Assembly (NCBI RefSeq): GCF_006345805.1
Contig: NW_021826805.1
Span: 1-12,349, forward strand
Length of the DNA: 12,349 nucleotides
Source of the DNA: Octopus sinensis
Taxonomy: Eukaryota
Direction: 5' to 3'
Part shown: one piece after another, positions 1,315 through 12,222 of the stretch
Numbering within the stretch: the stretch's first letter is position 1
Layout of the letters: every line of letters begins with the position of its first letter
The notes under the pieces: generated by a model
What the model saw: the letters and a program-made list of their open reading frames with translations, nothing else
What the model was told of the DNA's origin: nothing
The model's database searches: none
Program-made: the position numbers and the translations under genes

Positions 1315-1560
1315 AATGAGGTAATCAGATCGGATGGTTCATATTTATAGATATTTATTATATATTACATTTTTTACATATATATCTATCATATCATTCA
1401 GATCACATCATTCGGATTATTAGCGCTTTCTCCCAATCAGTGGGGTTTTCAAATCAAATATATATATATATATACATATATTATACATATACGTTTATAT
1501 ATCTATTTTGCAAGATTCCTGATGTGAAATCGTATTTTAGTGACAAAGGAAAGGACACTA

Positions 1561-1615
1561 AAATAATAATTGTAATAATAATAATAATGATATTAATAAT
1601 AGCAATAATGATAAT
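1561..1615 (+). repeat. Degenerate (ATA/TAA)n microsatellite
   Basis: AATAATAATTGTAATAATAATAATAATG...; gives the poly-Ile stretch of ORF 1440..1922. Confidence 0.9.
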
Positions 1616-1870
1616 CATCCATAAAGACGAAAATGAAGCAAAGATGATAGATGTTGCAATAGCAGGCGATTCGAGGGTGAAATGTAAGGAAACAGAAAAT
1701 AGTGAGAAATACCAGCCACTGCGGGACGAGATAGGAAAGTTATGGGGCATGAGGAAAGTAATGGTGATACCAGTGGTAACTGGGGCATTAGGAGCTGCTG
1801 TCAGGCTCGAGGTGATCCAGAAGACAGCATTGTTGGGTACAGAACGCATTCTAAGGAGAAAAATTGTCTC
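1612..1870 (+). mobile_element. 5'-truncated non-LTR retrotransposon fragment: C-terminal restriction-like endonuclease (RLE) domain, R2/R4-Dong/NeSL-type
   Basis: Translation IIHKDENEAKMIDVAIAGDSRVKCKETENSEKYQPLRDEIGKLWGMRKVMVIPVVTGALG...RLEVIQKTALLGTERILRR fits the RLE pattern (IDVAxPxD...EKxEKY..L..E...LW...VIPVVxGALG...IQKxALLGTxxILR). There is an apparent internal deletion after GALGAAV and no RT domain. Confidence 0.85.
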
Positions 1871-2000
1871 TTTGAGTCACGGGAGAAGGCATACCCACAC
1901 ACATATACATACATCTACATAACAGCCCACTAACTGTTCTACCTGTATATATAAAATGTGTGTATATGGATATGACTACTTAGGTAGAATATTTAGTGGG

Positions 2001-2092
2001 CAGCTATGTAGATGTGTGTGTGTGTGTGCGTGTGTGTTTATATGTGTTTATATGTATATGTATGTGTGTATGTGTGTGTGTGTGTGTGTGTG
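2001..2092. repeat. (TG)n/(TA)n microsatellite
   Basis: Seen directly. Confidence 0.9.
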
Positions 2093-2097
2093 CCTTT

Positions 2098-2300
2098 CGG
2101 CCCCACCATTGCCTGACAACCGGTGTTGTTGATTTTGTGTCCGTAACTTAGCGGTTCGGATTAAGAAAATGATAGAATAAGTACTTGGCTCAGAAGGAAA
2201 AGGATTGAGGTGGTTTCGCTCGTCTAAAATTCTTCAAAGCCGTGCTGCAGTATGGCCGCAGTCTAGTGTTTGAAACAAGTAAAAGATTAAAGAATAAGGA
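2098..2300 (+). mobile_element. 3' half of a tRNA-derived SINE
   Basis: TGACAACCGGTGTTG...GTAACTTAGCGGTTCGG...GATAGAATAAGTACT...GGCCGCAGTC...GAAACAAGTAAAAGA matches the other copies in the window. Confidence 0.85.
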
Positions 2301-2301
2301 G

Positions 2302-2520
2302 AATAGGGGTCTTCATGGAATAGGGGATAATGTTTTCAAGAAACAACTTGACCCCCTGCTATCCAAGATTCCATGTGAACCAATATCAAGGAAGGAGATT
2401 CAAAAAGAGCCAGCAGTGTCGAATTCCCTCCTTCACCAAAGCCGATCACATAGAATTGGCTATTTAAGGGGTGATTACACTGGTTGTGCCCAATCATGGC
2501 CACAGCCTTGGGGCTGATAT
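2302..2520 (+). mobile_element. 3' fragment of a LINE ORF2 (CR1/L2-group-like C-terminus) plus 3' UTR
   Basis: RGLHGIGDNVFKKQLDPLLSKIPCEPISRKEIQKEPAVSNSLLHQ resembles the FKxxLDxxLxxIPDxP...SNSL motif at the end of LINE ORF2 proteins. Clade assignment is tentative. Confidence 0.6.

Positions 2521-3405: not shown

Positions 3406-3436
<31 letters not shown>
3406..3436. repeat. (CT)n microsatellite
   Basis: Seen directly. Confidence 0.95.
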
Positions 3437-3440
<4 letters not shown>

Positions 3441-3648
3441 TCTTTTACTCTTTTACTTGTTTCAGTCATTTGACTGCGGCCATGCTGGAGCATCGCCTTT
3501 AGTCGAGCAAATCGACCCAGGACTTATTCTTTGTAAGCCTAGTACTTATTCTATCGGTCTCTTTTGCCGAACGCTAAGTTACGGGGCGTAAACCACACCA
3601 GCATCCGTTGTCAAGCGATGTTGGGGGGACAAACCCAGACACACAAAC
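3437..3648 (-). mobile_element. 3' half of a tRNA-derived SINE; its 5' half is at 7907-8060 (split element)
   Basis: Near-identical to the 3' halves of the intact copies at 8900-9300 and 11777-12180. It ends at the internal (CA)/(TA) microsatellite. Confidence 0.9.
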
Positions 3649-3718
3649 GTATACACACACATACATATATATATATAATATATTATATATTATATATTAT
3701 ATATATACCACACACCAC

Positions 3719-3759
<41 letters not shown>

Positions 3760-3761
3760 CT
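3649..3761. repeat. (CA)/(TA)n microsatellite, left flank of the array
   Basis: Seen directly. Confidence 0.95.
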
Positions 3762-4026
3762 ATTTAGCAATTAAGGACAACTACTTAATAAGGAAAACTT
3801 AACAAGAAATTGTCAGGTAGATAGCGTAAAAACCTCATAAGAGAAAAAATTTCGAAAATAATTATTTCTTATTGAACATATTAATTTATATATAGAGGGC
3901 ATTATACATACATGCCAGGAGGCATTCTACATACACGCCATACGCTAAGAGGGACAATCAGTCATTTCTACCAAAAATATTACTAATCCCACCGAATGCA
4001 ATTTTTCAAAGAAAGACATTTAAAAA

Positions 4027-4086
4027 TATATAGACCTGTATCACAGTGATTTCATACTTACGTAATCATCAGCAGGCCTGAATATA
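4027..4086 (-). ncRNA. Type I hammerhead ribozyme, copy 1 (core intact; predicted cut between 4039 and 4038)
   Basis: Same motif as 7289-7348, reverse complemented. Confidence 0.8.
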
Positions 4087-4506
4087 CTATAAATGAACAA
4101 CGACCCTGCTTCGCTTAAGCCGATCAGCTAACTGATCAACATCAACGAAGCACATGGGTGGGTTTATATATATACTATATCCGGATGAATGGCAAACTTT
4201 TACGAATTGCATTCGGGAGAGGAAAAGTTTTTTCGGAATATAAAATTTAGCAATTAAGGACAACTATTAATAAGGAAAACTTAACAAGAAATTGTCAGGT
4301 AGATAGCGTAAAAACCTCATAAGAGAAAAAATTTCGAAAATAATTATTCCTATTGAACATATTAATTTATATATAGAGGGCATTATACATACATGCCAGG
4401 AGGCATTCTACATACACGCCATACGCTAAGAGGGACAATCAGTCATTTCTACAAAAATATTACTAATCCCACTGAATGCAATTTTTCAAAGAAAGACATT
4501 TAAAAA

Positions 4507-4565
4507 TATATAGACCTGTATCACAGTGATTTCATACTTAGGTAATCTCAGCAGGCCTGAATATA
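4507..4565 (-). ncRNA. Type I hammerhead ribozyme, copy 2, core damaged
   Basis: The minus strand reads CTGAGA instead of CTGATGA (1-nt deletion) and has a substitution in loop/stem II (plus-strand TTAGGTAA for TTACGTAA). This may be a sequencing error. Confidence 0.55.
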
Positions 4566-4980
4566 CTATAAATAAACAACGACCCTGCTTCGCTTAAGCC
4601 GATCAGCTAACTGATCACATCAACGAAGCACATGGTAGGTTTATATATACTATATCCGGATGAATGGCAAACTTTTACGAATTGCATTTCGGGAGAGGAA
4701 AAGTTTTTTCGGAATAAAAATTTAGCAATTAAGGACAACTACTTAATAAGGAAAACTTAACAAGAAATTGTCAGGTAGATAGCGTAAAAACCTCATAAGA
4801 GAAAAAATTTCGAAAATAATTATTTCTTATTGAACATATAATATATATAGAGGGCATTATACATACATGCCAGGAGGCATTCTACATACACGCCATACGC
4901 TAAGAGGGACAATCAGTCATTTCTACCAAAAATATTACTAATCCCACCGAATGCAATTTTTCAAAGAAAGAATTTAAAAA

Positions 4981-5039
4981 TATATAGACCTGTATCACAG
5001 TGATTTCATACTTACGTAATCATCAGCAGGCCTGATATA
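4981..5039 (-). ncRNA. Type I hammerhead ribozyme, copy 3 (core intact; cut between 4993 and 4992)
   Basis: Same motif, with 1 nt missing in distal stem I. Confidence 0.8.
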
Positions 5040-5460
5040 TACTAAAATAAACAACGACCCTGCTTCGCTTAAGCCGATCAGCTAACTGATCAACATCAAC
5101 GAAGCACATGGGTGGGTTTATATATACTATATCCGGATGAATGGCAAACTTTTACGAATTGCATTCGGGAGAGGAAAAGTTTTTTCGGAATAAAAATTTA
5201 GCAATTAAGGACAACTACTTAATAAGGAAAACTTAACAAGAAATTGTCAGGTAATAGCGTAAAAACCTCATAATATAAAAAATTTCGAAAATAATTATTT
5301 CTTATTGAACATATTAATTTATTATATAGAGGGCATTATACATACATGCCAGGAGGCATTCTACATACACGCCATACGCTAAGAGGGACAATCAGTCATT
5401 TCTACCAAAAATATTACTAATCCCACCGAATGCAATTTTTCAAAGAAAGACATTTAAAAA

Positions 5461-5520
5461 TATATAGACCTGTATCACAGTGATTTCATACTTACGTAAT
5501 CATCAGCAGGCCTGAATATA
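5461..5520 (-). ncRNA. Type I hammerhead ribozyme, copy 4 (intact; cut between 5473 and 5472)
   Basis: Same motif. Confidence 0.8.
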
Positions 5521-5939
5521 CTATAAATAAACAACGACCCTGCTTCGCTTAAGCCGATCAGCTAACTGATCAACATCAACGAAGCACATGGGTGGGTTTA
5601 TATATACTATATCCGGATGAATGGCAAACTTTTACGAATTGCATTCGGGAGAGGAAAAGTTTTTTCGGAATAAAAATTTAGCAATTAAGGACAACTACTT
5701 AATAAGGAAAACTAACAAGAAATTGTCAGGTAGATAGCGTAAAAACCTCATAAGAGAAAAAATTTCGAAAATAATTATTTCTTATTGAACATATTAATTT
5801 ATATATAGAGGGCATTATACATACATGCCAGGAGGCATTCTACATACACGCCATACGCTAAGAGGGACAATCAGTCATTTCTACCAAAAATATTACTAAT
5901 CCCACCGAATGCAATTTTTCAAAGAAAGACATTTAAAAA

Positions 5940-5999
5940 TATATAGACCTGTATCACAGTGATTTCATACTTACGTAATCATCAGCAGGCCTGAATATA
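5940..5999 (-). ncRNA. Type I hammerhead ribozyme, copy 5 (intact; cut between 5952 and 5951)
   Basis: Same motif. Confidence 0.8.
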
Positions 6000-6419
6000 C
6001 TATAAATAAACAACGACCCTGCTTCGCTTAAGCCGATCAGCTAACTGATCAACATCAACGAAGCACATGGGTGGGTTTATATATACTATATCCGGATGAA
6101 TGGCAACTTTTACGAATTGCATTTCGGGAGAGGAAAAGTTTTTTCGGAATAAAAATTTAGCAATTAAGGACAACTACTTAATAAGGAAAACTTAACAAGA
6201 AATTGTCAGGTAGATAGCGTAAAAACCTCATAAGAGAAAAAATTTCGAAAATAATTATTTCTTATTGAACATATTAATTTATATATAGAGGGCATTATAC
6301 ATACATGCCAGGAGGCATTCTACATACACGCCATACGCTAAGAGGGACAATCAGTCATTTCTACCAAAAATATTACTAATCCCACCGAATGCAATTTTTC
6401 AAAGAAAGACATTTAAAAA

Positions 6420-6479
6420 TATATAGACCTGTATCACAGTGATTTCATACTTACGTAATCATCAGCAGGCCTGAATATA
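6420..6479 (-). ncRNA. Type I hammerhead ribozyme, copy 6 (intact; cut between 6432 and 6431)
   Basis: Same motif. Confidence 0.8.
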
Positions 6480-6824
6480 CTATAAATAAACAACGACCCT
6501 GCTTCGCTTAAGCCGCAGCAGCTAACTGATCAACATCAACGAAGCACATGGGTGGGTTTATATATACTATATCCGGATGAATGGCAAAACTTTTACGAAT
6601 TGCATTTCGGGAGAGGAAAAGTTTTTTCGGAATAAAAATTTAGCAATTAAGGACAACTACTTAATAAGGAAAACTTAACAAGAAATTGTCAGGTAGATAG
6701 CGTAAAAACCTCATAAGAGAAAAAATTTCGAAAATAATTATTTCTTATTGAACATATTAATTTATATATAGAGGGCATTATACATACATGCCAGGAGGCA
6801 TTCTACATACACGCCATACGCTAA

Positions 6825-6868
6825 GATGATTACGTAAGTATGAAATCACTGTGATACAGGTCTATATA
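6825..6868 (+). ncRNA. 5'-truncated hammerhead at the inversion junction (inactive as written)
   Basis: Begins at G5 (GATGA...). It lacks C3-U4 and the 5' strand of stem I. Confidence 0.7.
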
Positions 6869-7288
6869 TTTTTAAATGTCTTTCTTTGAAAAATTGCATT
6901 CGGTGGGATTAGTAATATTTTTGGTAGAAATGACTGATTGTCCCTCTTAGCGTATGGCGTGTATGTAGAATGCCTCGTGGCATGTATGTATAATGCCCTC
7001 TATATATAAATTAATATGTTCAATAAGAAATATTATTTTCGAAATTTTTTCTCTTATGAGGTTTTTACGCTATCTACCTGACAATTTCTTGTTAAGTTTT
7101 CCTTATTAAGTAGTTGTCCTTAATTGCTAAATTTTTATTCCGAAAAAACTTTTCCTCTCCCGAAATGCAATTCGTAAAAGTTTGCCATTCATCCGGATAT
7201 AGTATATATAAACCCACCCATGTGCTTCGTTGATGTTGATCAGTTAGCTGATCGGCTTAAGCGAAGCAGGGTCGTTGTTTATTTATAG

Positions 7289-7348
7289 TATATTCAGGCC
7301 TGCTGATGATTACGTAAGTATGAAATCACTGTGATACAGGTCTATATA
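7289..7348 (+). ncRNA. Type I hammerhead ribozyme (intact; predicted cut after A7336)
   Basis: Stem I TATAT-(TC bulge)-AGGCCTG (7289-7302) pairs with CAGGTCT-ATATA (7337-7348). Core CTGATGA 7303-7309. Stem II T-TAC-GTAA-GTA-T 7310-7321 has a GNRA loop. GAAA 7322-7325. Stem III ATCAC-T-GTGAT 7325-7335. AUA cleavage triplet. Confidence 0.8.
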
Positions 7349-7488
7349 TTTTTAAATGTCTTTCTTTGAAAAATTGCATTCGGTGGGATTAGTAATATTT
7401 TTGGTAGAAATGACTGATTGTCCCTCTTAGCGTATGGCGTGTATGTAGAATGCCTCCTGGCATGTATGTATAATGCCCTCTATATATA

Positions 7489-7512
7489 TATAATATATAT
7501 ATATATATAATA

Positions 7513-7570
<58 letters not shown>
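7489..7570. repeat. (TA)n(TG)n microsatellite, right flank of the array
   Basis: Seen directly. Confidence 0.95.
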
Positions 7571-7879
7571 GAGGCGCAATGGCCCAGTGGTTAGGGCATC
7601 GGACTCGCGGTCGTAGGATCGCGGTTTCGATTCCCAGACCCGGCGTTGTGAGTGTTTATTGAGCGAAAACACCTAAAGTTCCACGAGGCTCCGGCAGGGG
7701 GTGGCGATCCCTGCTGTACTCTTTCGCCACAACTTTCTCTCACTCTTTCTTCTGTTGGCCTGCTCGCTTAGCCAGCGGGGTGGCATCATTTGAAGGCTAA
7801 AAAACAATGCGAAGCGCATTGTGACCAGCGATGTGTAGCAACATCTTATAGCGTGGTCGGTCACGGTGATCACGGTGAT
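7570..7879 (+). mobile_element. Full-length tRNA-derived SINE (second family)
   Basis: A box TGGCCCAGTGG 7580-7590, B box GGTTTCGATTCC 7623-7634, 3' tandem TCACGGTGA x2 (7861-7878). Confidence 0.85.
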
Positions 7880-7906
7880 ATATATGTATATATATATATA
7901 CATTTA

Positions 7907-8060
7907 TACGACGGGTTTCTTTCAGTATCCGTCTACCAAATCCACTCACAAGGCTTTAGTCGGCCCGAGTCTATAGTAGAAGACACTTGCCCAAGGTACC
8001 ACGCAGTGGGACTGGACCTGGAACCACGTGGTTGGTAAGCAAGCTACTTACCACAACTAC
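7907..8060 (-). mobile_element. 5' (tRNA-head) half of the split SINE whose 3' half is at 3437-3648
   Basis: TACGACGGG...CCAAATCCACTCACAAGGC...GACACTTGCCCAAGG...GCTACTTACCAC matches the head halves of the intact copies. Confidence 0.85.
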
Positions 8061-8602: not shown

Positions 8603-8810
8603 ATATGTAAAAATAATATGTGACAATTATTCGGTAGCCAAGATAAAACTCTGAATTTCGGGTGCCAAGTTGGAAATCCACACCACCATCTCTTCAGTTA
8701 TCTGGCCATCCGAAAAACGAAGAGATGGCGTCGTGGATTTCCACCTCGGCACCCGAAACTCAGAGTTTATCTTGGCTACCGAGTAATTGTCACATATTAT
8801 TTTTACAGAT
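8603..8810. mobile_element. ~205-bp imperfect palindrome (MITE/fold-back-like)
   Basis: Arm 8606-8681 is complementary to 8733-8807 with a few mismatches. Inner stem CCATCTCTTC (8686-8695) pairs with GAAGAGATGG (8719-8728) around a 23-nt loop. Confidence 0.75.
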
Positions 8811-8899: not shown

Positions 8900-9300
8900 C
8901 TCTTACTCTTTATCTTTTACTTGTTTCAGTCATTTGACTGCGGCCATGCTGGAGCACCACCTTTAATCGAGCAACTCGACACCGGGACTTATTCTTTGTA
9001 AGCCCAGTACTTATTCTATCGGTCTCTTTTGCCGAACCGCTAAGTAACGGGGACATAAACACACCAGCATCGGTTGTCAAGCAATGCTAGGGGGACACAC
9101 AGACACACAAACACACACACGCATATATATATACATATATACGACGGGCTTCTTTCAGTCTCTCTACCAAATCCACTCACAAGGCATTGGTCGGCCGAGG
9201 CTATAAGTAAGACACTTGCCCAAGGTGCCACGCCGTGGGACTGAACCCGGAACCATGTGGTTGGTAAACAAGCTACTTACCACACAGCCACTCCTGCGCC
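8900..9300 (-). mobile_element. Full-length tRNA-derived SINE with an internal (TA)(TG) microsatellite
   Basis: Minus-strand head GGCGCAGGAGTGGCTGTGTGGTAAG, B-box-like GGGTTCAGTCC, central CCTTGGGCAAGTGTCTT, tail (AAAGAGT)-like. Confidence 0.9.
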
Positions 9301-9310
9301 TATATATATA

Positions 9311-9882
9311 AATAGTTATCGCCATACTAATATGGCAGTCTATAAATAAGACTAAAGCTGTCGTTGATTAGCTCCAAGAGGCCATCGCCTCTAGCTAGCT
9401 ATATGACACACGAACCTGCGTCCATTACAACCTTCGATATTAGTATGGCGATAACTATTAATATCCAGTAACGCTGCCGTAATCTCCTTTAGAGAGACTT
9501 AGTAATTTTAATATTTCTATTACTGAAAACAAGTGGATGTATTCCACTGTAACTAGGTAAATAAAATCTTCGAACAGATGGTCAGTAGCGACACCTGCTG
9601 GTTCTGACTACGCTGCATTGATAAAGGGCAACAACCCTGAAACATGTCTGCAGATGTCTGACTAGCAAGGCGAAGCGGCTGACCTCCCTTGTTCGAAGGT
9701 TGTAATGGACGCAGGTTCGTGTTTCATATAGCTAGCTAGAGGCGATGGCCTCTTGGAGCTAATCAGCGACAGCTTTAGTCTTATTTATAGACTGCCATAT
9801 TAGTATGGTGATAACTATTAATATCCAGTAACGCTGCCGTAATCTCCTTTAGAGAGACTTAGTAATTTTAATATTTCTATTA
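9311..9882 (+). mobile_element. Candidate retrozyme family 2: 360-bp unit (9437-9796) plus partial second copy (9797-9882), preceded by an inverted 127-bp piece (9311-9437)
   Basis: 9437-9522 repeats at 9797-9882 (period 360). 9311-9437 is the reverse complement of 9693-9819. (TA)n lies on both sides and there is an internal HHR. Confidence 0.8.
9597..9666 (+). ncRNA. Type I hammerhead ribozyme, U3-A8 core variant (predicted cut after C9648, GUC)
   Basis: Stem I CTGCA 9613-9617 pairs with TGCAG 9649-9653. Core TTGATAA 9618-9624. Stem II AGGG-CAACAA-CCCT 9625-9638. GAA 9639-9641. Palindromic stem III ACATGT 9642-9647, then C17. Distal stem I: GAC/GTC and GCTGGTT 9597-9603 with GACTAGC 9660-9666. 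Confidence 0.75.

Positions 9883-11156: not shown

Positions 11157-11229
<73 letters not shown>
10993..11229. repeat. (TA)n/(TACA)n microsatellite
   Basis: Seen directly. Confidence 0.95.
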
Positions 11230-11550
11230 GAAGGTGTGTAGCGTAGTGGTTAGGATGTTTAGCTCACGATCGTGGGATTGTGAGTTCGATTTCCGGCGGC
11301 GAGTTGTGTCCTTGAGCAAGACACTGTATTTGACGTTGCTCCAGTCTACCTTAGCTAGCGAAAATGAGTATCTGCAATTCAAAGAAGGCCAGCTTTGAAA
11401 CATTCTGTGAAATGCTCTACTTCCCTGAAAACTAAGTCAAGTGTACGCGTTTCTGCGGAGTTCTCAGCAACTTGCATGTTAACTTCACGAGGAGGTTGTT
11501 GATTGGGTCAACAGGAAGCCTCGTTGTCGTAAACGTCGCAGAGGCAGTCC
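11230..11550 (+). mobile_element. Diverged tRNA-derived SINE (third family)
   Basis: A-box-like TAGCGTAGTGG 11239-11249, B-box-like GAGTTCGATTT 11282-11292, central GTGTCCTTGAGCAAGACACT typical of conserved-domain SINEs. Confidence 0.7.
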
Positions 11551-11776: not shown

Positions 11777-12180
11777 CTTCTTTTACTTGTTCCAGACATT
11801 TAACTGCGGCTATGCTGGAGCACCGCCTTTAGTCGAGCAAATCAACCCCGGGACTTATTCTTTGTAAGCCCAGTACTTATTCTATCGGTCACTTTTTGAC
11901 GAACCGCTAAGTGACGGAGACGTAAACACACCAGCATCGGTTGTCAAGCAATTCTAGGGGGACAAACACAGGCACACAAACACACACACATACATATATA
12001 TATATATACATATATACGACAGGCTTCTTTCAGTTTCCGTCTACCAAATCCACTCACAAGGCATTGGTCGGCCCGAGGCTATAAGTAGAAGACACTTGCC
12101 CAAGATGCCACGCAGTGGGACTGAACCCGGAACCATGTGGTTGGTTAGCAAGCTACTTACCACACAGCCACTCCTGCGCC
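11777..12180 (-). mobile_element. Full-length tRNA-derived SINE (same family as 8900-9300)
   Basis: Same head, A/B boxes, internal microsatellite and tail as 8900-9300. Confidence 0.9.
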
Positions 12181-12183
12181 TAT

Positions 12184-12222
<39 letters not shown>

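What the first reader, a model, noticed from the sequence alone, without database searches (positions are those of the whole stretch)
3762..7488. Tandem ~480-bp repeats each carrying a type I hammerhead ribozyme: candidate cephalopod non-LTR retrozyme
Seen: every full unit has CTGATGA...GAAA...TA with stems I, II and III in type I topology, one per unit, on one polarity only. Established: metazoan non-LTR retrozymes are tandem genomic repeats of a few hundred bp with type I HHRs. They self-cleave to monomers, circularise, and are thought to be mobilised by Penelope-like RTs. Inference: minus-strand transcription would release monomers 6431-5952 (480 nt), 5951-5473 (479 nt) and 5472-4993 (480 nt). 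That is longer than the roughly 170-400 nt I recall for described animal families, and I do not recognise this family. The 6.4 head-to-tail copies fit rolling-circle reverse transcription of a circular RNA.
Basis: partly seen in the sequence, partly recalled or inferred. Interest (0 to 1): 0.92.

Follow-up and report, generated by a model that had tools for sequence, protein, structure and literature searches.

The report
Octopus tandem repeat with hammerhead-like motif
A young 480-bp non-coding tandem repeat, inserted into an older SINE in an octopus-like genome, carries a hammerhead-ribozyme-like motif in most units, so it is most likely an ordinary new member of the known animal "retrozyme" repeats, although the motif is atypical and self-cleavage is untested.

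Summary
The array is real: 480-bp units, 6.4 copies, 97% alike, at 3762-6826.

- 6825-7491 is another 1.4 units in inverted orientation, joined head-to-head.
- One unit's motif is broken and one is cut at the junction. Six of eight are intact.
- Stem II is three pairs plus a U·U mismatch where hammerheads nearly always have G10.1-C11.1.

No Rfam hammerhead model matches, even at E<=10 on an 81-nt slice. Even so, the full core in type I geometry is expected only about 1e-6 to 2e-5 times per unit by chance.

The monomer RNA is non-coding, 33% GC, 63% paired, and folds far better than shuffles (z -6.3). Two intact paralogous SINE copies serve as empty sites. They show the array lies in about 4.2 kb of inserted DNA within a (TA)n tract. 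Both RNA-sense 3' ends abut (TA)n and the 5' ends meet in the middle, as in twin-primed reverse transcription.

The best reading is a non-LTR retrozyme array (confidence 0.55). Its size is not unusual: pDo500 is about 500 bp, and retrozyme families reach 972 bp. No relatives could be retrieved, so core conservation and self-cleavage remain untested.

The parts
3434..3683 (.). Left half of the split host SINE, copy C of the ~410-bp repeat 'R'
   Evidence: Matches intact R copies at 8900-9139 (88.7%) and 11779-12015 (87.2%). The joined flanks align to the intact copies in a single HSP.
3684..3761 (.). (TA)n-rich microsatellite abutting the RNA-sense 3' end of the minus-strand array
   Evidence: TRF row 3661-3759; sequence read.
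3762..6826 (-). Main array with hammerhead polarity on the minus strand: a 5'-truncated unit 6826-6432 (395 nt), five full units (6431-5952, 5951-5473, 5472-4993, 4992-4519, 4518-4039), and a 3' partial unit 4038-3762 (277 nt)
6425..6472 (-). Intact hammerhead-like motif, predicted cleavage after 6432
5945..5992 (-). Intact hammerhead-like motif, predicted cleavage after 5952. This is the copy that was folded.
5466..5513 (-). Intact hammerhead-like motif, predicted cleavage after 5473
4986..5033 (-). Intact hammerhead-like motif, predicted cleavage after 4993
4512..4558 (-). Degenerate motif: the core reads CUGAGA (U7 deleted) and loop II has a G-to-C change
   Evidence: Absent from the lists.
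4032..4079 (-). Intact hammerhead-like motif, predicted cleavage after 4039
6825..7491 (+). Inverted part of the array with hammerhead polarity on the plus strand: 32 nt starting inside the CUGAUGA box, one full unit 6857-7336, and then about 155 nt ending in the unit's own UAUAUAUA tract
   Evidence: (I2: 315 nt, 99%; I4: 239 nt, 100%; D9).
6825..6826 (.). Head-to-head junction where the 5' ends of both arrays meet, at unit positions about 86 and about 449, sharing 2 nt (GA) of microhomology
   Evidence: Sequence; unit coordinates.
7296..7343 (+). Intact hammerhead-like motif in the inverted unit, predicted cleavage after 7336
7492..7570 (.). (TA)n followed by (TG)n, abutting the RNA-sense 3' end of the inverted array
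7571..7866 (+). A separate tRNA-like SINE ('S2') nested in the same microsatellite. It is not part of the repeat.
   Evidence: Sequence. The boundaries are approximate and read by eye.
7887..8055 (.). Right half of the split host SINE, copy C of 'R'
   Evidence: Matches 11995-12164 (91.8%) and 9123-9284 (89.2%).

Best explanation
This is a young array of a non-autonomous, non-coding retroelement of the metazoan non-LTR retrozyme kind, in an octopus-lineage genome.

Shown:
- The unit is 480 bp, 33% GC, and has no reading frame longer than 57-58 aa.
- It forms a 3.07-kb direct array plus 0.67 kb in inverted orientation.
- The whole array lies in about 4.2 kb of inserted DNA within the (TA)n tract of an older SINE.
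- Both RNA-sense 3' ends abut (TA)n, and the two 5' ends meet head-to-head.
- Six of eight units carry a complete hammerhead core in type I order.
- The monomer RNA is unusually well paired.

Inferred:
- A donor locus is transcribed on the motif strand.
- The hammerhead cuts the multimer after AUA. It probably acts as a double hammerhead, because helix III is marginal as a hairpin (-0.2 kcal/mol) but stable as a duplex between two copies (-10.1 kcal/mol).
- A reverse transcriptase supplied in trans copies the circle, or an uncut multimer, round and round. It is primed at a nicked (TA)n target, and priming from both nicks (twin priming) gives the inverted 5'-truncated arm. Penelope-like elements are the literature's candidate source, but a LINE is not excluded here.
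- Whether this copy's U·U variant hammerhead cleaves is unknown.
For: - Array and exact monomers.
- Core in type I order, stem I of 7 bp, AUA cleavage triplet, four consecutive intact motifs.
- Chance expectation: 0-1 hit per 40 Mb of random sequence. Only 6 suitable junction geometries exist in the unit, each with about a 2.7e-7 chance of carrying the core.
- The motif's fold energy is -8.3 kcal/mol, and its MFE of -10.3 kcal/mol is below the -5 kcal/mol cut-off for 'active' retrozymes in bioRxiv 10.64898/2026.07.22.740005. Cofolding two copies gives the double-hammerhead arrangement.
- Low GC and no coding capacity.
- RNA folding: linear monomer -129.8 kcal/mol, z -6.3. Circular monomer -123.1 kcal/mol, 63% paired, z -6.3 on the motif strand against -5.1 on the antisense strand. 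PMC7229834 and PMC7761336 describe retrozyme circRNAs as highly self-paired.
- Insertion: split SINE copy C compared with intact copies A and B. The joined flanks align in one HSP.
- Neither the 3' ends (unit positions about 277 and about 155) nor the 5' ends (about 86 and about 449) coincide with the cleavage site. This argues against a linear monomer template and for a circle or multimer.
- All substitutions among copies are singletons, pointing to one burst rather than stepwise duplication.
- Tandem insertions with an inverted 5'-truncated copy, and a bias for microsatellite targets, are described for Penelope-like elements (PMC8557442). Octopus vulgaris has recently active Penelope families (PMC13282606).
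Against: - No Rfam hammerhead model (types I, II, III, HH9, HH10) matches at E<=1 on the window or at E<=10 on an 81-nt slice.
- Positions 10.1/11.1 are U·U, whereas G10.1-C11.1 is described as highly conserved even in minimal Penelope-element hammerheads (PMC4209133).
- Stem II has only three Watson-Crick pairs.
- The hammerhead fold is not the MFE of the 48-nt segment (-8.3 against -10.3 kcal/mol) and makes up about 0.3% of the ensemble.
- The genomic copies show no preferential conservation of the motif. The most diverged unit has two of its roughly nine changes inside it.
- No second locus or related species could be retrieved, so there is no covariation or family evidence.
- Across a genome of about 2.7 Gb, on the order of 100 chance matches to my descriptor are expected.
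- (TA)n targeting and twin-priming geometry are not specific to Penelope-like elements. Two unrelated tRNA-like SINEs in the window also sit in (TA)n.
Confidence: 0.55

Rival explanations
1. The repeat is mobile or satellite DNA whose hammerhead-like motif is a chance match or a dead relic. It was inserted and amplified without any ribozyme step, for example by retrotransposition of an uncut multimeric transcript, or as a tandem-repeat-bearing non-autonomous element.
For: - Rfam is negative.
- U·U sits at the normally G-C 10.1/11.1 pair (PMC4209133).
- The hammerhead fold is a minor conformer.
- The motif is not spared by mutation within the array.
- Roughly 100 chance matches per genome are expected.
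- The strong folding z-score could be a property of any palindrome-rich repeat, since the antisense strand also scores z -4.3 to -5.1.
Against: - For this one 480-bp unit the chance expectation is about 1e-6 to 2e-5.
- The motif has all 11 fixed core positions, a favourable AUA triplet, a 7-bp stem I abutting the core on both sides, and the weak near-palindromic helix III typical of metazoan type I hammerheads (PMC4209133).
- Hammerheads lacking helix II altogether (minizymes) can still cleave (PMC544870), so U·U need not be fatal.
- Hammerhead-bearing tandem repeats are widespread in invertebrates, including molluscs (PMC7229834).
Confidence: 0.3
2. A single unit, or a short piece, was inserted. 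The array then grew locally at the DNA level by unequal crossing-over, replication slippage or re-integration of rolling-circle eccDNA. The inverted arm came from a later rearrangement or from an assembly error.
For: - Tandem arrays commonly expand this way.
- Most differences between copies are 1-nt homopolymer indels, which hints at long-read noise and so at possible assembly problems in the array.
Against: - No substitution is shared between neighbouring copies, as stepwise duplication would produce.
- The inverted arm is not a mirror image of the adjacent sequence. The junction joins unit position about 86 to about 449, so a simple hairpin or chimeric-read artefact is unlikely.
- The two outer ends lie at different unit positions, and each is an RNA-sense 3' end next to (TA)n. 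That is the signature of target-primed reverse transcription from both nicks.
- The inverted full unit is as close to the consensus as the direct ones, so it is the same age.
Confidence: 0.15

Closest known systems
Metazoan non-LTR retrozymes (Cervera & de la Pena 2020, PMC7229834), for example the 350-390-bp Mytilus galloprovincialis repeats
   Same: [quoted passage not shown] The predicted RNA is highly self-paired. The mussel hammerheads also lack the archetypal loop-loop contacts. The host is a mollusc.
   Different: The unit is somewhat longer than the 170-400 nt in that paper, though it lies inside the 51-972 bp range reported later. Positions 10.1/11.1 are U·U, and there is no Rfam hammerhead hit. 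No RNA or cleavage data exist. I found no report of cephalopod retrozymes in two full-text searches.
pDo500 satellite DNA of Dolichopoda cave crickets (PMC2837043; Rojas et al. 2000)
   Same: Tandem units of 463-505 bp, each carrying a 49-nt hammerhead. Single- and double-hammerhead modes have been proposed for it.
   Different: pDo500 makes up about 5% of the genome and is conserved across 12 species. Its hammerhead is demonstrably more conserved than the rest of the unit, with compensatory changes, and in vitro cleavage has been shown. None of this is known here. There is no sequence relationship.
Penelope-like element pseudo-LTRs with minimal type I hammerheads (PMC4209133, PMC8557442)
   Same: A type I hammerhead with a weak helix III, thought to act as a dimer. 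Insertions form partial tandems with an inverted 5'-truncated copy and show a bias for microsatellite targets.
   Different: The unit and the window contain no RT or GIY-YIG reading frame (the Pfam scan of window ORFs found nothing significant). The Penelope-element hammerheads keep G10.1-C11.1 and usually have one unpaired nucleotide after A9. The (TA)n bias is documented mainly for Naiads, which lack hammerheads.
L1 twin-priming inversions (established knowledge: Ostertag & Kazazian 2001)
   Same: The two arms are in opposite orientation, their 5' ends meet at an internal junction with short microhomology, and both 3' ends lie next to the target.
   Different: That template is a polyadenylated linear mRNA. 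Here there is no poly(A), and the arms are multimers of a 480-nt unit.

Membership tests
Metazoan non-LTR retrozyme | Head-to-tail tandem repeats with a unit of roughly 150-1000 bp | tested here: met
   TRF finds period 480, 6.4 copies, 97% matches. Another 1.4 copies lie inverted.
Metazoan non-LTR retrozyme | One type I hammerhead per unit with the conserved core (CUGANGA, GAAA, UH) and helices I-III | tested here: met
   Six identical motifs in type I order; stem I 7 bp, stem II 3 bp plus U·U, stem III 4 bp. The chance rate is very low.
Metazoan non-LTR retrozyme | [quoted passage not shown] | tested here: met
   Four consecutive intact motifs, cleaving after 6432, 5952, 5473 and 4993. MFE -10.3 kcal/mol; hammerhead fold -8.3 kcal/mol. 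Whether their rnabob descriptor would accept U·U is unknown.
Metazoan non-LTR retrozyme | Low GC (<45%) and no protein-coding capacity | tested here: met
   GC 0.32-0.35. The longest stop-free frame is 57-58 aa, with no protein homologues.
Metazoan non-LTR retrozyme | Monomer RNA predicted to be highly self-paired | tested here: met
   z -6.3 against dinucleotide shuffles; 63% paired as a circle.
Metazoan non-LTR retrozyme | Self-cleavage of transcripts, and accumulation of monomeric linear and circular RNA | not testable with these tools
   Needs in vitro transcription, Northern blots or RNase R treatment.
Metazoan non-LTR retrozyme | A dispersed multi-locus family in the genome, with the hammerhead conserved among copies | not testable with these tools
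   No cephalopod DNA is in the searchable collections. Exact-pattern scans and ORF-based look-ups found nothing. There is no other copy in the window.
Hammerhead ribozyme (Rfam Hammerhead_1 / HH9 / HH10 / II / 3) | Match to a curated covariance model | tested here: not met
   No hammerhead family is listed at E<=1 for the window or at E<=10 for 5930-6010.
Hammerhead ribozyme (canonical or Penelope-element minimal type I) | G10.1-C11.1 pair closing helix II | tested here: not met
   U·U in all copies. The pair is described as highly conserved in PMC4209133.
Hammerhead ribozyme (metazoan type I) | A weak helix III with near-palindromic sequence that allows a double hammerhead | tested here: met
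   Hairpin -0.2 kcal/mol against self-duplex -10.1 kcal/mol; the cofold MFE adopts the dimer. Any short-loop hairpin is near-palindromic, so this is weak evidence.
Penelope-like element (autonomous) | An ORF with RT and GIY-YIG endonuclease domains between pseudo-LTRs | tested here: not met
   The unit has no such ORF. The Pfam scan of window ORFs has no significant hit.

The most novel reading that the evidence does not exclude
Octopuses harbour an active retrozyme family whose hammerhead works with a U·U mismatch in place of the near-universal G10.1-C11.1 pair and yields ~480-nt circular RNAs. On this reading, the locus preserves a fresh integration event whose geometry gives structural evidence for how retrozyme circles are reverse-transcribed and integrated, a step the literature still treats as hypothetical. 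That geometry comprises multimeric arms from both target nicks, priming inside the unit's own UAUAUA tract, a (TA)n target, and no end at the cleavage site.
Probability: 0.3. Interest if true: 0.55.

Novelty: new member of a known kind. Interest (0 to 1): 0.35.

Why it matters
If the motif cleaves, cephalopods join the animal groups known to have hammerhead retrozymes, and a natural ribozyme would be shown to tolerate loss of the G10.1-C11.1 pair. More useful is the clean paralogous empty site together with the twin-arm structure. Together they give a concrete, testable picture of retrozyme integration, whose autonomous partner and priming mode are still inferred only from co-occurrence and from homology to Penelope-element pseudo-LTRs. 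If the motif does not cleave, this is simply one more young tandem repeat in a repeat-rich genome.

Tried and rejected
- Rfam cmscan of the whole window at E<=1 and of 5930-6010 at E<=10 found no hammerhead or other ribozyme. It returned only low-complexity miRNA-like noise.
- Exact-pattern scans found nothing. I used a non-motif 21-mer and a gapped motif pattern against metagenome contigs, viral contigs and, for the motif pattern only, prokaryotic genome contigs.
- Three ORF-based routes to other copies failed: an exact look-up of the 57-aa repeat ORF, a homology search with a 58-aa ORF, and a search with 15 concatenated stop-free frames of the array.
- The Logan and ENA loci reached through the LINE remnant contain neither the unit nor the window's SINEs.
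- The hairpin assembly-artefact reading of the inversion is rejected, because the junction is phase-shifted from unit position about 86 to about 449.
- The TIR-transposon reading is rejected, because the two outer ends are at different unit positions.
- ARAGORN found no tRNA genes.
- The Pfam scan of window ORFs gave no significant domain.
- Alternative registers for stem II that would avoid the U·U mismatch were examined by hand. None pairs better.
- I could not obtain a Penelope-element pseudo-LTR from an octopus to compare with the unit.
Full report
**1. The observation**

Tandem Repeats Finder reports a single long-period array at 3762-6826: period 480, 6.4 copies, 97% matches, 1% indels. 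I read the minus strand and split it at GUGAUA|CAGGUC. It also gives 4992-4519 (474 nt), 4518-4039 (480 nt), a 5'-truncated unit 6826-6432 (395 nt) and a 3' partial unit 4038-3762 (277 nt).

Region 6825-7491 holds another 1.4 units in the opposite orientation. The inverted-repeat arms are 315 nt at 99% and 239 nt at 100% complementary, and 6825-7011 repeats at 7305-7491 with 480-nt spacing (sequence).

The inverted arm is not the mirror image of what precedes it. The junction joins unit position about 86 of the minus-strand array to unit position about 449 of the plus-strand arm, inside the CUGAUGA box, with 2 nt (GA) shared. A simple hairpin or chimeric-read artefact is therefore unlikely.

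**2. The hammerhead-like motif**

On the motif strand each intact unit ends with this sequence, in type I order with helix I open:

AGGCCUG-CUGAUGA-U-UAC-GUAA-GUA-U-GAAA-UCA-CUG-UGA-UA|CAGGUCU

- CTGATGA occurs six times in the window against 1.1 expected.
- A descriptor scan I wrote finds six identical 48-nt motifs: five on the minus strand and one on the plus strand in the inverted unit. The descriptor requires CUGANGA, helix II, GAAA, helix III closed by A15.1-U16.1, H17, and helix I abutting the core on both sides.
- The seventh copy, at 4558-4512, has lost U7 (CUGAGA) and has a G-to-C change in loop II. The eighth is cut at the inversion junction. 'Every full unit' is therefore not correct.

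The motif deviates from the norm in two ways. Helix II is three Watson-Crick pairs capped by a GUAA tetraloop, and the pair next to the core (10.1/11.1) is U·U. That pair is G-C in nearly all natural hammerheads and is called 'highly conserved' even in the minimal hammerheads of Penelope-like elements (PMC4209133).

Consistent with this, no Rfam hammerhead model matches, either at E<=1 over the window or at E<=10 on an 81-nt slice centred on the motif.

**3. Is the motif chance?**

- In two 40-Mb first-order Markov sequences, one trained on the unit and one on the window, the descriptor gives 0 and 1 hits at the motif's own stringency (helix I of at least 7 bp, a mismatch at 10.1/11.1 allowed). 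With helix I of at least 4 bp it gives 4 and 2 hits.
- Taking the unit's own self-complementarity into account, both strands hold only 6 three-way-junction geometries of the right shape at that stringency, or 90 at the relaxed one. The chance that one of them carries the fixed core letters is about 2.7e-7 for this base composition.
- The expectation for this unit is therefore about 1e-6 to 2e-5.

Two caveats apply. And a genome of about 2.7 Gb should contain on the order of 100 chance matches to the stringent descriptor, so a genome-wide scan could find one inside some tandem repeat by accident. I put that expectation below one but not at a negligible level.

**4. Properties of the RNA**

- The unit is 32-35% GC. 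It has no stop-free frame longer than 57-58 aa.
- The 480-nt monomer on the motif strand folds at -129.8 kcal/mol, with z -6.3 against dinucleotide shuffles.
- As a circle it folds at -123.1 kcal/mol, is 63% paired, and again gives z -6.3. The antisense strand gives z -4.3 (linear) and -5.1 (circular).
- Helix I of the motif is present in the monomer MFE.
- For the isolated 48-nt motif, the hammerhead fold (-8.3 kcal/mol) lies 2 kcal/mol above the MFE (-10.3 kcal/mol).
- Helix III is marginal as a hairpin (-0.2 kcal/mol) but stable as a duplex between two copies (-10.1 kcal/mol). Cofolding two motifs gives the double-hammerhead arrangement.
- This matches the description of metazoan type I hammerheads as dimer-dependent (PMC4209133, PMC7761336). 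However, any short-loop hairpin is near-palindromic, so I count it as weak evidence.

**5. The array is inserted DNA**

A self-comparison of the window with the array masked shows an interspersed repeat of about 410 bp, which I call R. By eye it is a tRNA-derived SINE with an internal (CA)n(TA)n tract.

- R has two intact copies: A at 8900-9309 and B at 11779-12189.
- A third copy, C, is split. Segment 3434-3683 matches the left part of A and B, and 7887-8055 matches the right part.
- Joining the two flanks gives a sequence that aligns to B and to A in a single HSP, at 85% and 83%.

So 3685-7886 (about 4.2 kb) was inserted into R's short (TA)n tract. The insert consists of:

- (TA)n
- the minus-strand array
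- the inverted arm
- (TA)n followed by (TG)n
- a separate tRNA-like SINE at about 7571-7866

A and B are paralogous empty sites, not orthologous ones. But no copy of R contains any part of the 480-bp unit, and the unit occurs nowhere else in the window.

**6. What the ends say**

- In RNA sense, both outer ends of the array are 3' ends, and both abut (TA)n.
- The left end is at unit position about 277 (...GCUAAAU).
- The right end is at about 150-155, inside the unit's own CUAUAUAUA tract, so it has microhomology to the target.
- The two 5' ends meet head-to-head in the middle. This is the geometry of twin-primed, target-primed reverse transcription, known for L1 (established knowledge). It is also the 'tandem plus inverted 5'-truncated copy' arrangement described for Penelope-like elements (PMC8557442).
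- None of the four ends coincides with the predicted cleavage site. This argues against a cleaved linear monomer as template and fits a circular or uncut multimeric RNA.
- Every substitution among the eight copies is a singleton, and the inverted full unit is as close to the consensus as the direct ones. That fits one burst of synthesis rather than stepwise duplication.
- Most differences are 1-nt homopolymer indels, which may be sequencing noise.

**7. Limits on the Penelope link**

About 7% of the non-insert window is (TA)n by TRF. At least two unrelated tRNA-like SINEs, at about 7571-7866 and about 11229-11550, also sit in (TA)n tracts. The (TA)n bias is documented chiefly for Naiad elements, which lack hammerheads (PMC8557442). 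The target and the inversion therefore suit a Penelope-like partner but do not identify one.

The window holds LINE 3' remnants (1440-1922 and 2242-2517) and no RT or GIY-YIG domain. Octopus vulgaris is reported to have recently active Penelope families (PMC13282606).

**8. Organism**

The LINE remnant's best protein matches are three Octopus bimaculoides UniRef entries, at 69-70% and 65% identity. This supports an octopod or cephalopod origin without naming the species.

**9. Comparison with what is known**

Metazoan non-LTR retrozymes are defined as follows (PMC7229834, PMC7761336):

- low GC
- no coding capacity
- a type I hammerhead in each unit
- expression as highly self-paired circular RNAs

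They have been demonstrated in a coral, a mussel and the axolotl.

On the size argument:

- A 2026 preprint reports family consensus lengths of 51-972 bp, with most families having at most seven repeat units (bioRxiv 10.64898/2026.07.22.740005).
- The pDo500 hammerhead satellite of cave crickets is 463-505 bp (PMC2837043).
- So 480 bp and 6.4 copies are typical.

On the preprint's operational criteria, this array qualifies: it is a TRF array, has at least two consecutive complete motifs, and the motif MFE is below -5 kcal/mol.

It fails two hammerhead-family features that I could test, namely a match to a curated covariance model and the G10.1-C11.1 pair. Hammerheads with no helix II at all (minizymes) can still cleave (PMC544870), so the U·U mismatch lowers but does not remove the prospect of activity.

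I found no paper reporting retrozymes or hammerhead repeats in cephalopods. The library is incomplete, so this is weak evidence of novelty.

**10. Verdict**

The most likely reading is a young retrozyme-type array (0.55). The main rival is that the motif is fortuitous or dead and the repeat moved without it (0.30). A DNA-level origin of the array is least likely (0.15).

It is a new member of a known kind. The locus has some value as a clean snapshot of an integration event.

The decisive data were out of reach of the tools here:

- family-wide conservation and covariation of the motif
- cleavage in vitro
- detection of a ~480-nt circular RNA

All attempts to retrieve other copies failed.

Noticed in passing
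window 8900-9309, 11779-12189, 3434-3683 + 7887-8055, and weaker 2046-2298 (minus): There are at least four copies of a ~410-bp interspersed repeat that looks like a tRNA-derived SINE with an internal (CA)n(TA)n microsatellite. The intact copies are 90.5% alike. From memory it resembles the very abundant octopus SINE.
   Followed up: partly
window ~7571-7866 (+) and ~11229-11550 (+): Two further tRNA-like SINEs of different sequence each sit directly next to (TA)n tracts. ARAGORN calls neither a tRNA. Their position suggests that (TA)n is a general landing site for retroelements in this genome.
   Followed up: partly
window 9306-9437 vs 9693-9824, and 9437-9522 vs 9797-9882: There is a 132-nt inverted repeat at 97% and an overlapping 86-nt direct repeat at 98.8%, just after SINE copy A. 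This is a complex palindromic structure of unknown nature.
   Followed up: no
window 8658-8755: A ~98-nt near-perfect hairpin gives a weak mir-605-like Rfam match (E 0.017, far below the gathering score). It may be a small inverted-repeat element.
   Followed up: no
window 1440-1922 and 2242-2517 (+): These are degraded LINE ORF2 C-terminal remnants. The first has Octopus bimaculoides 'uncharacterized proteins' as best hits at 69-70% identity and matches Logan contigs from SRR11869394 and SRR11869384 at 77% DNA identity.
   Followed up: partly
window 3762-7491: Most differences between repeat copies are single-base length changes in homopolymer or TA runs. This looks more like long-read sequencing noise, or reverse-transcriptase slippage, than point-mutation decay.
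   Followed up: no
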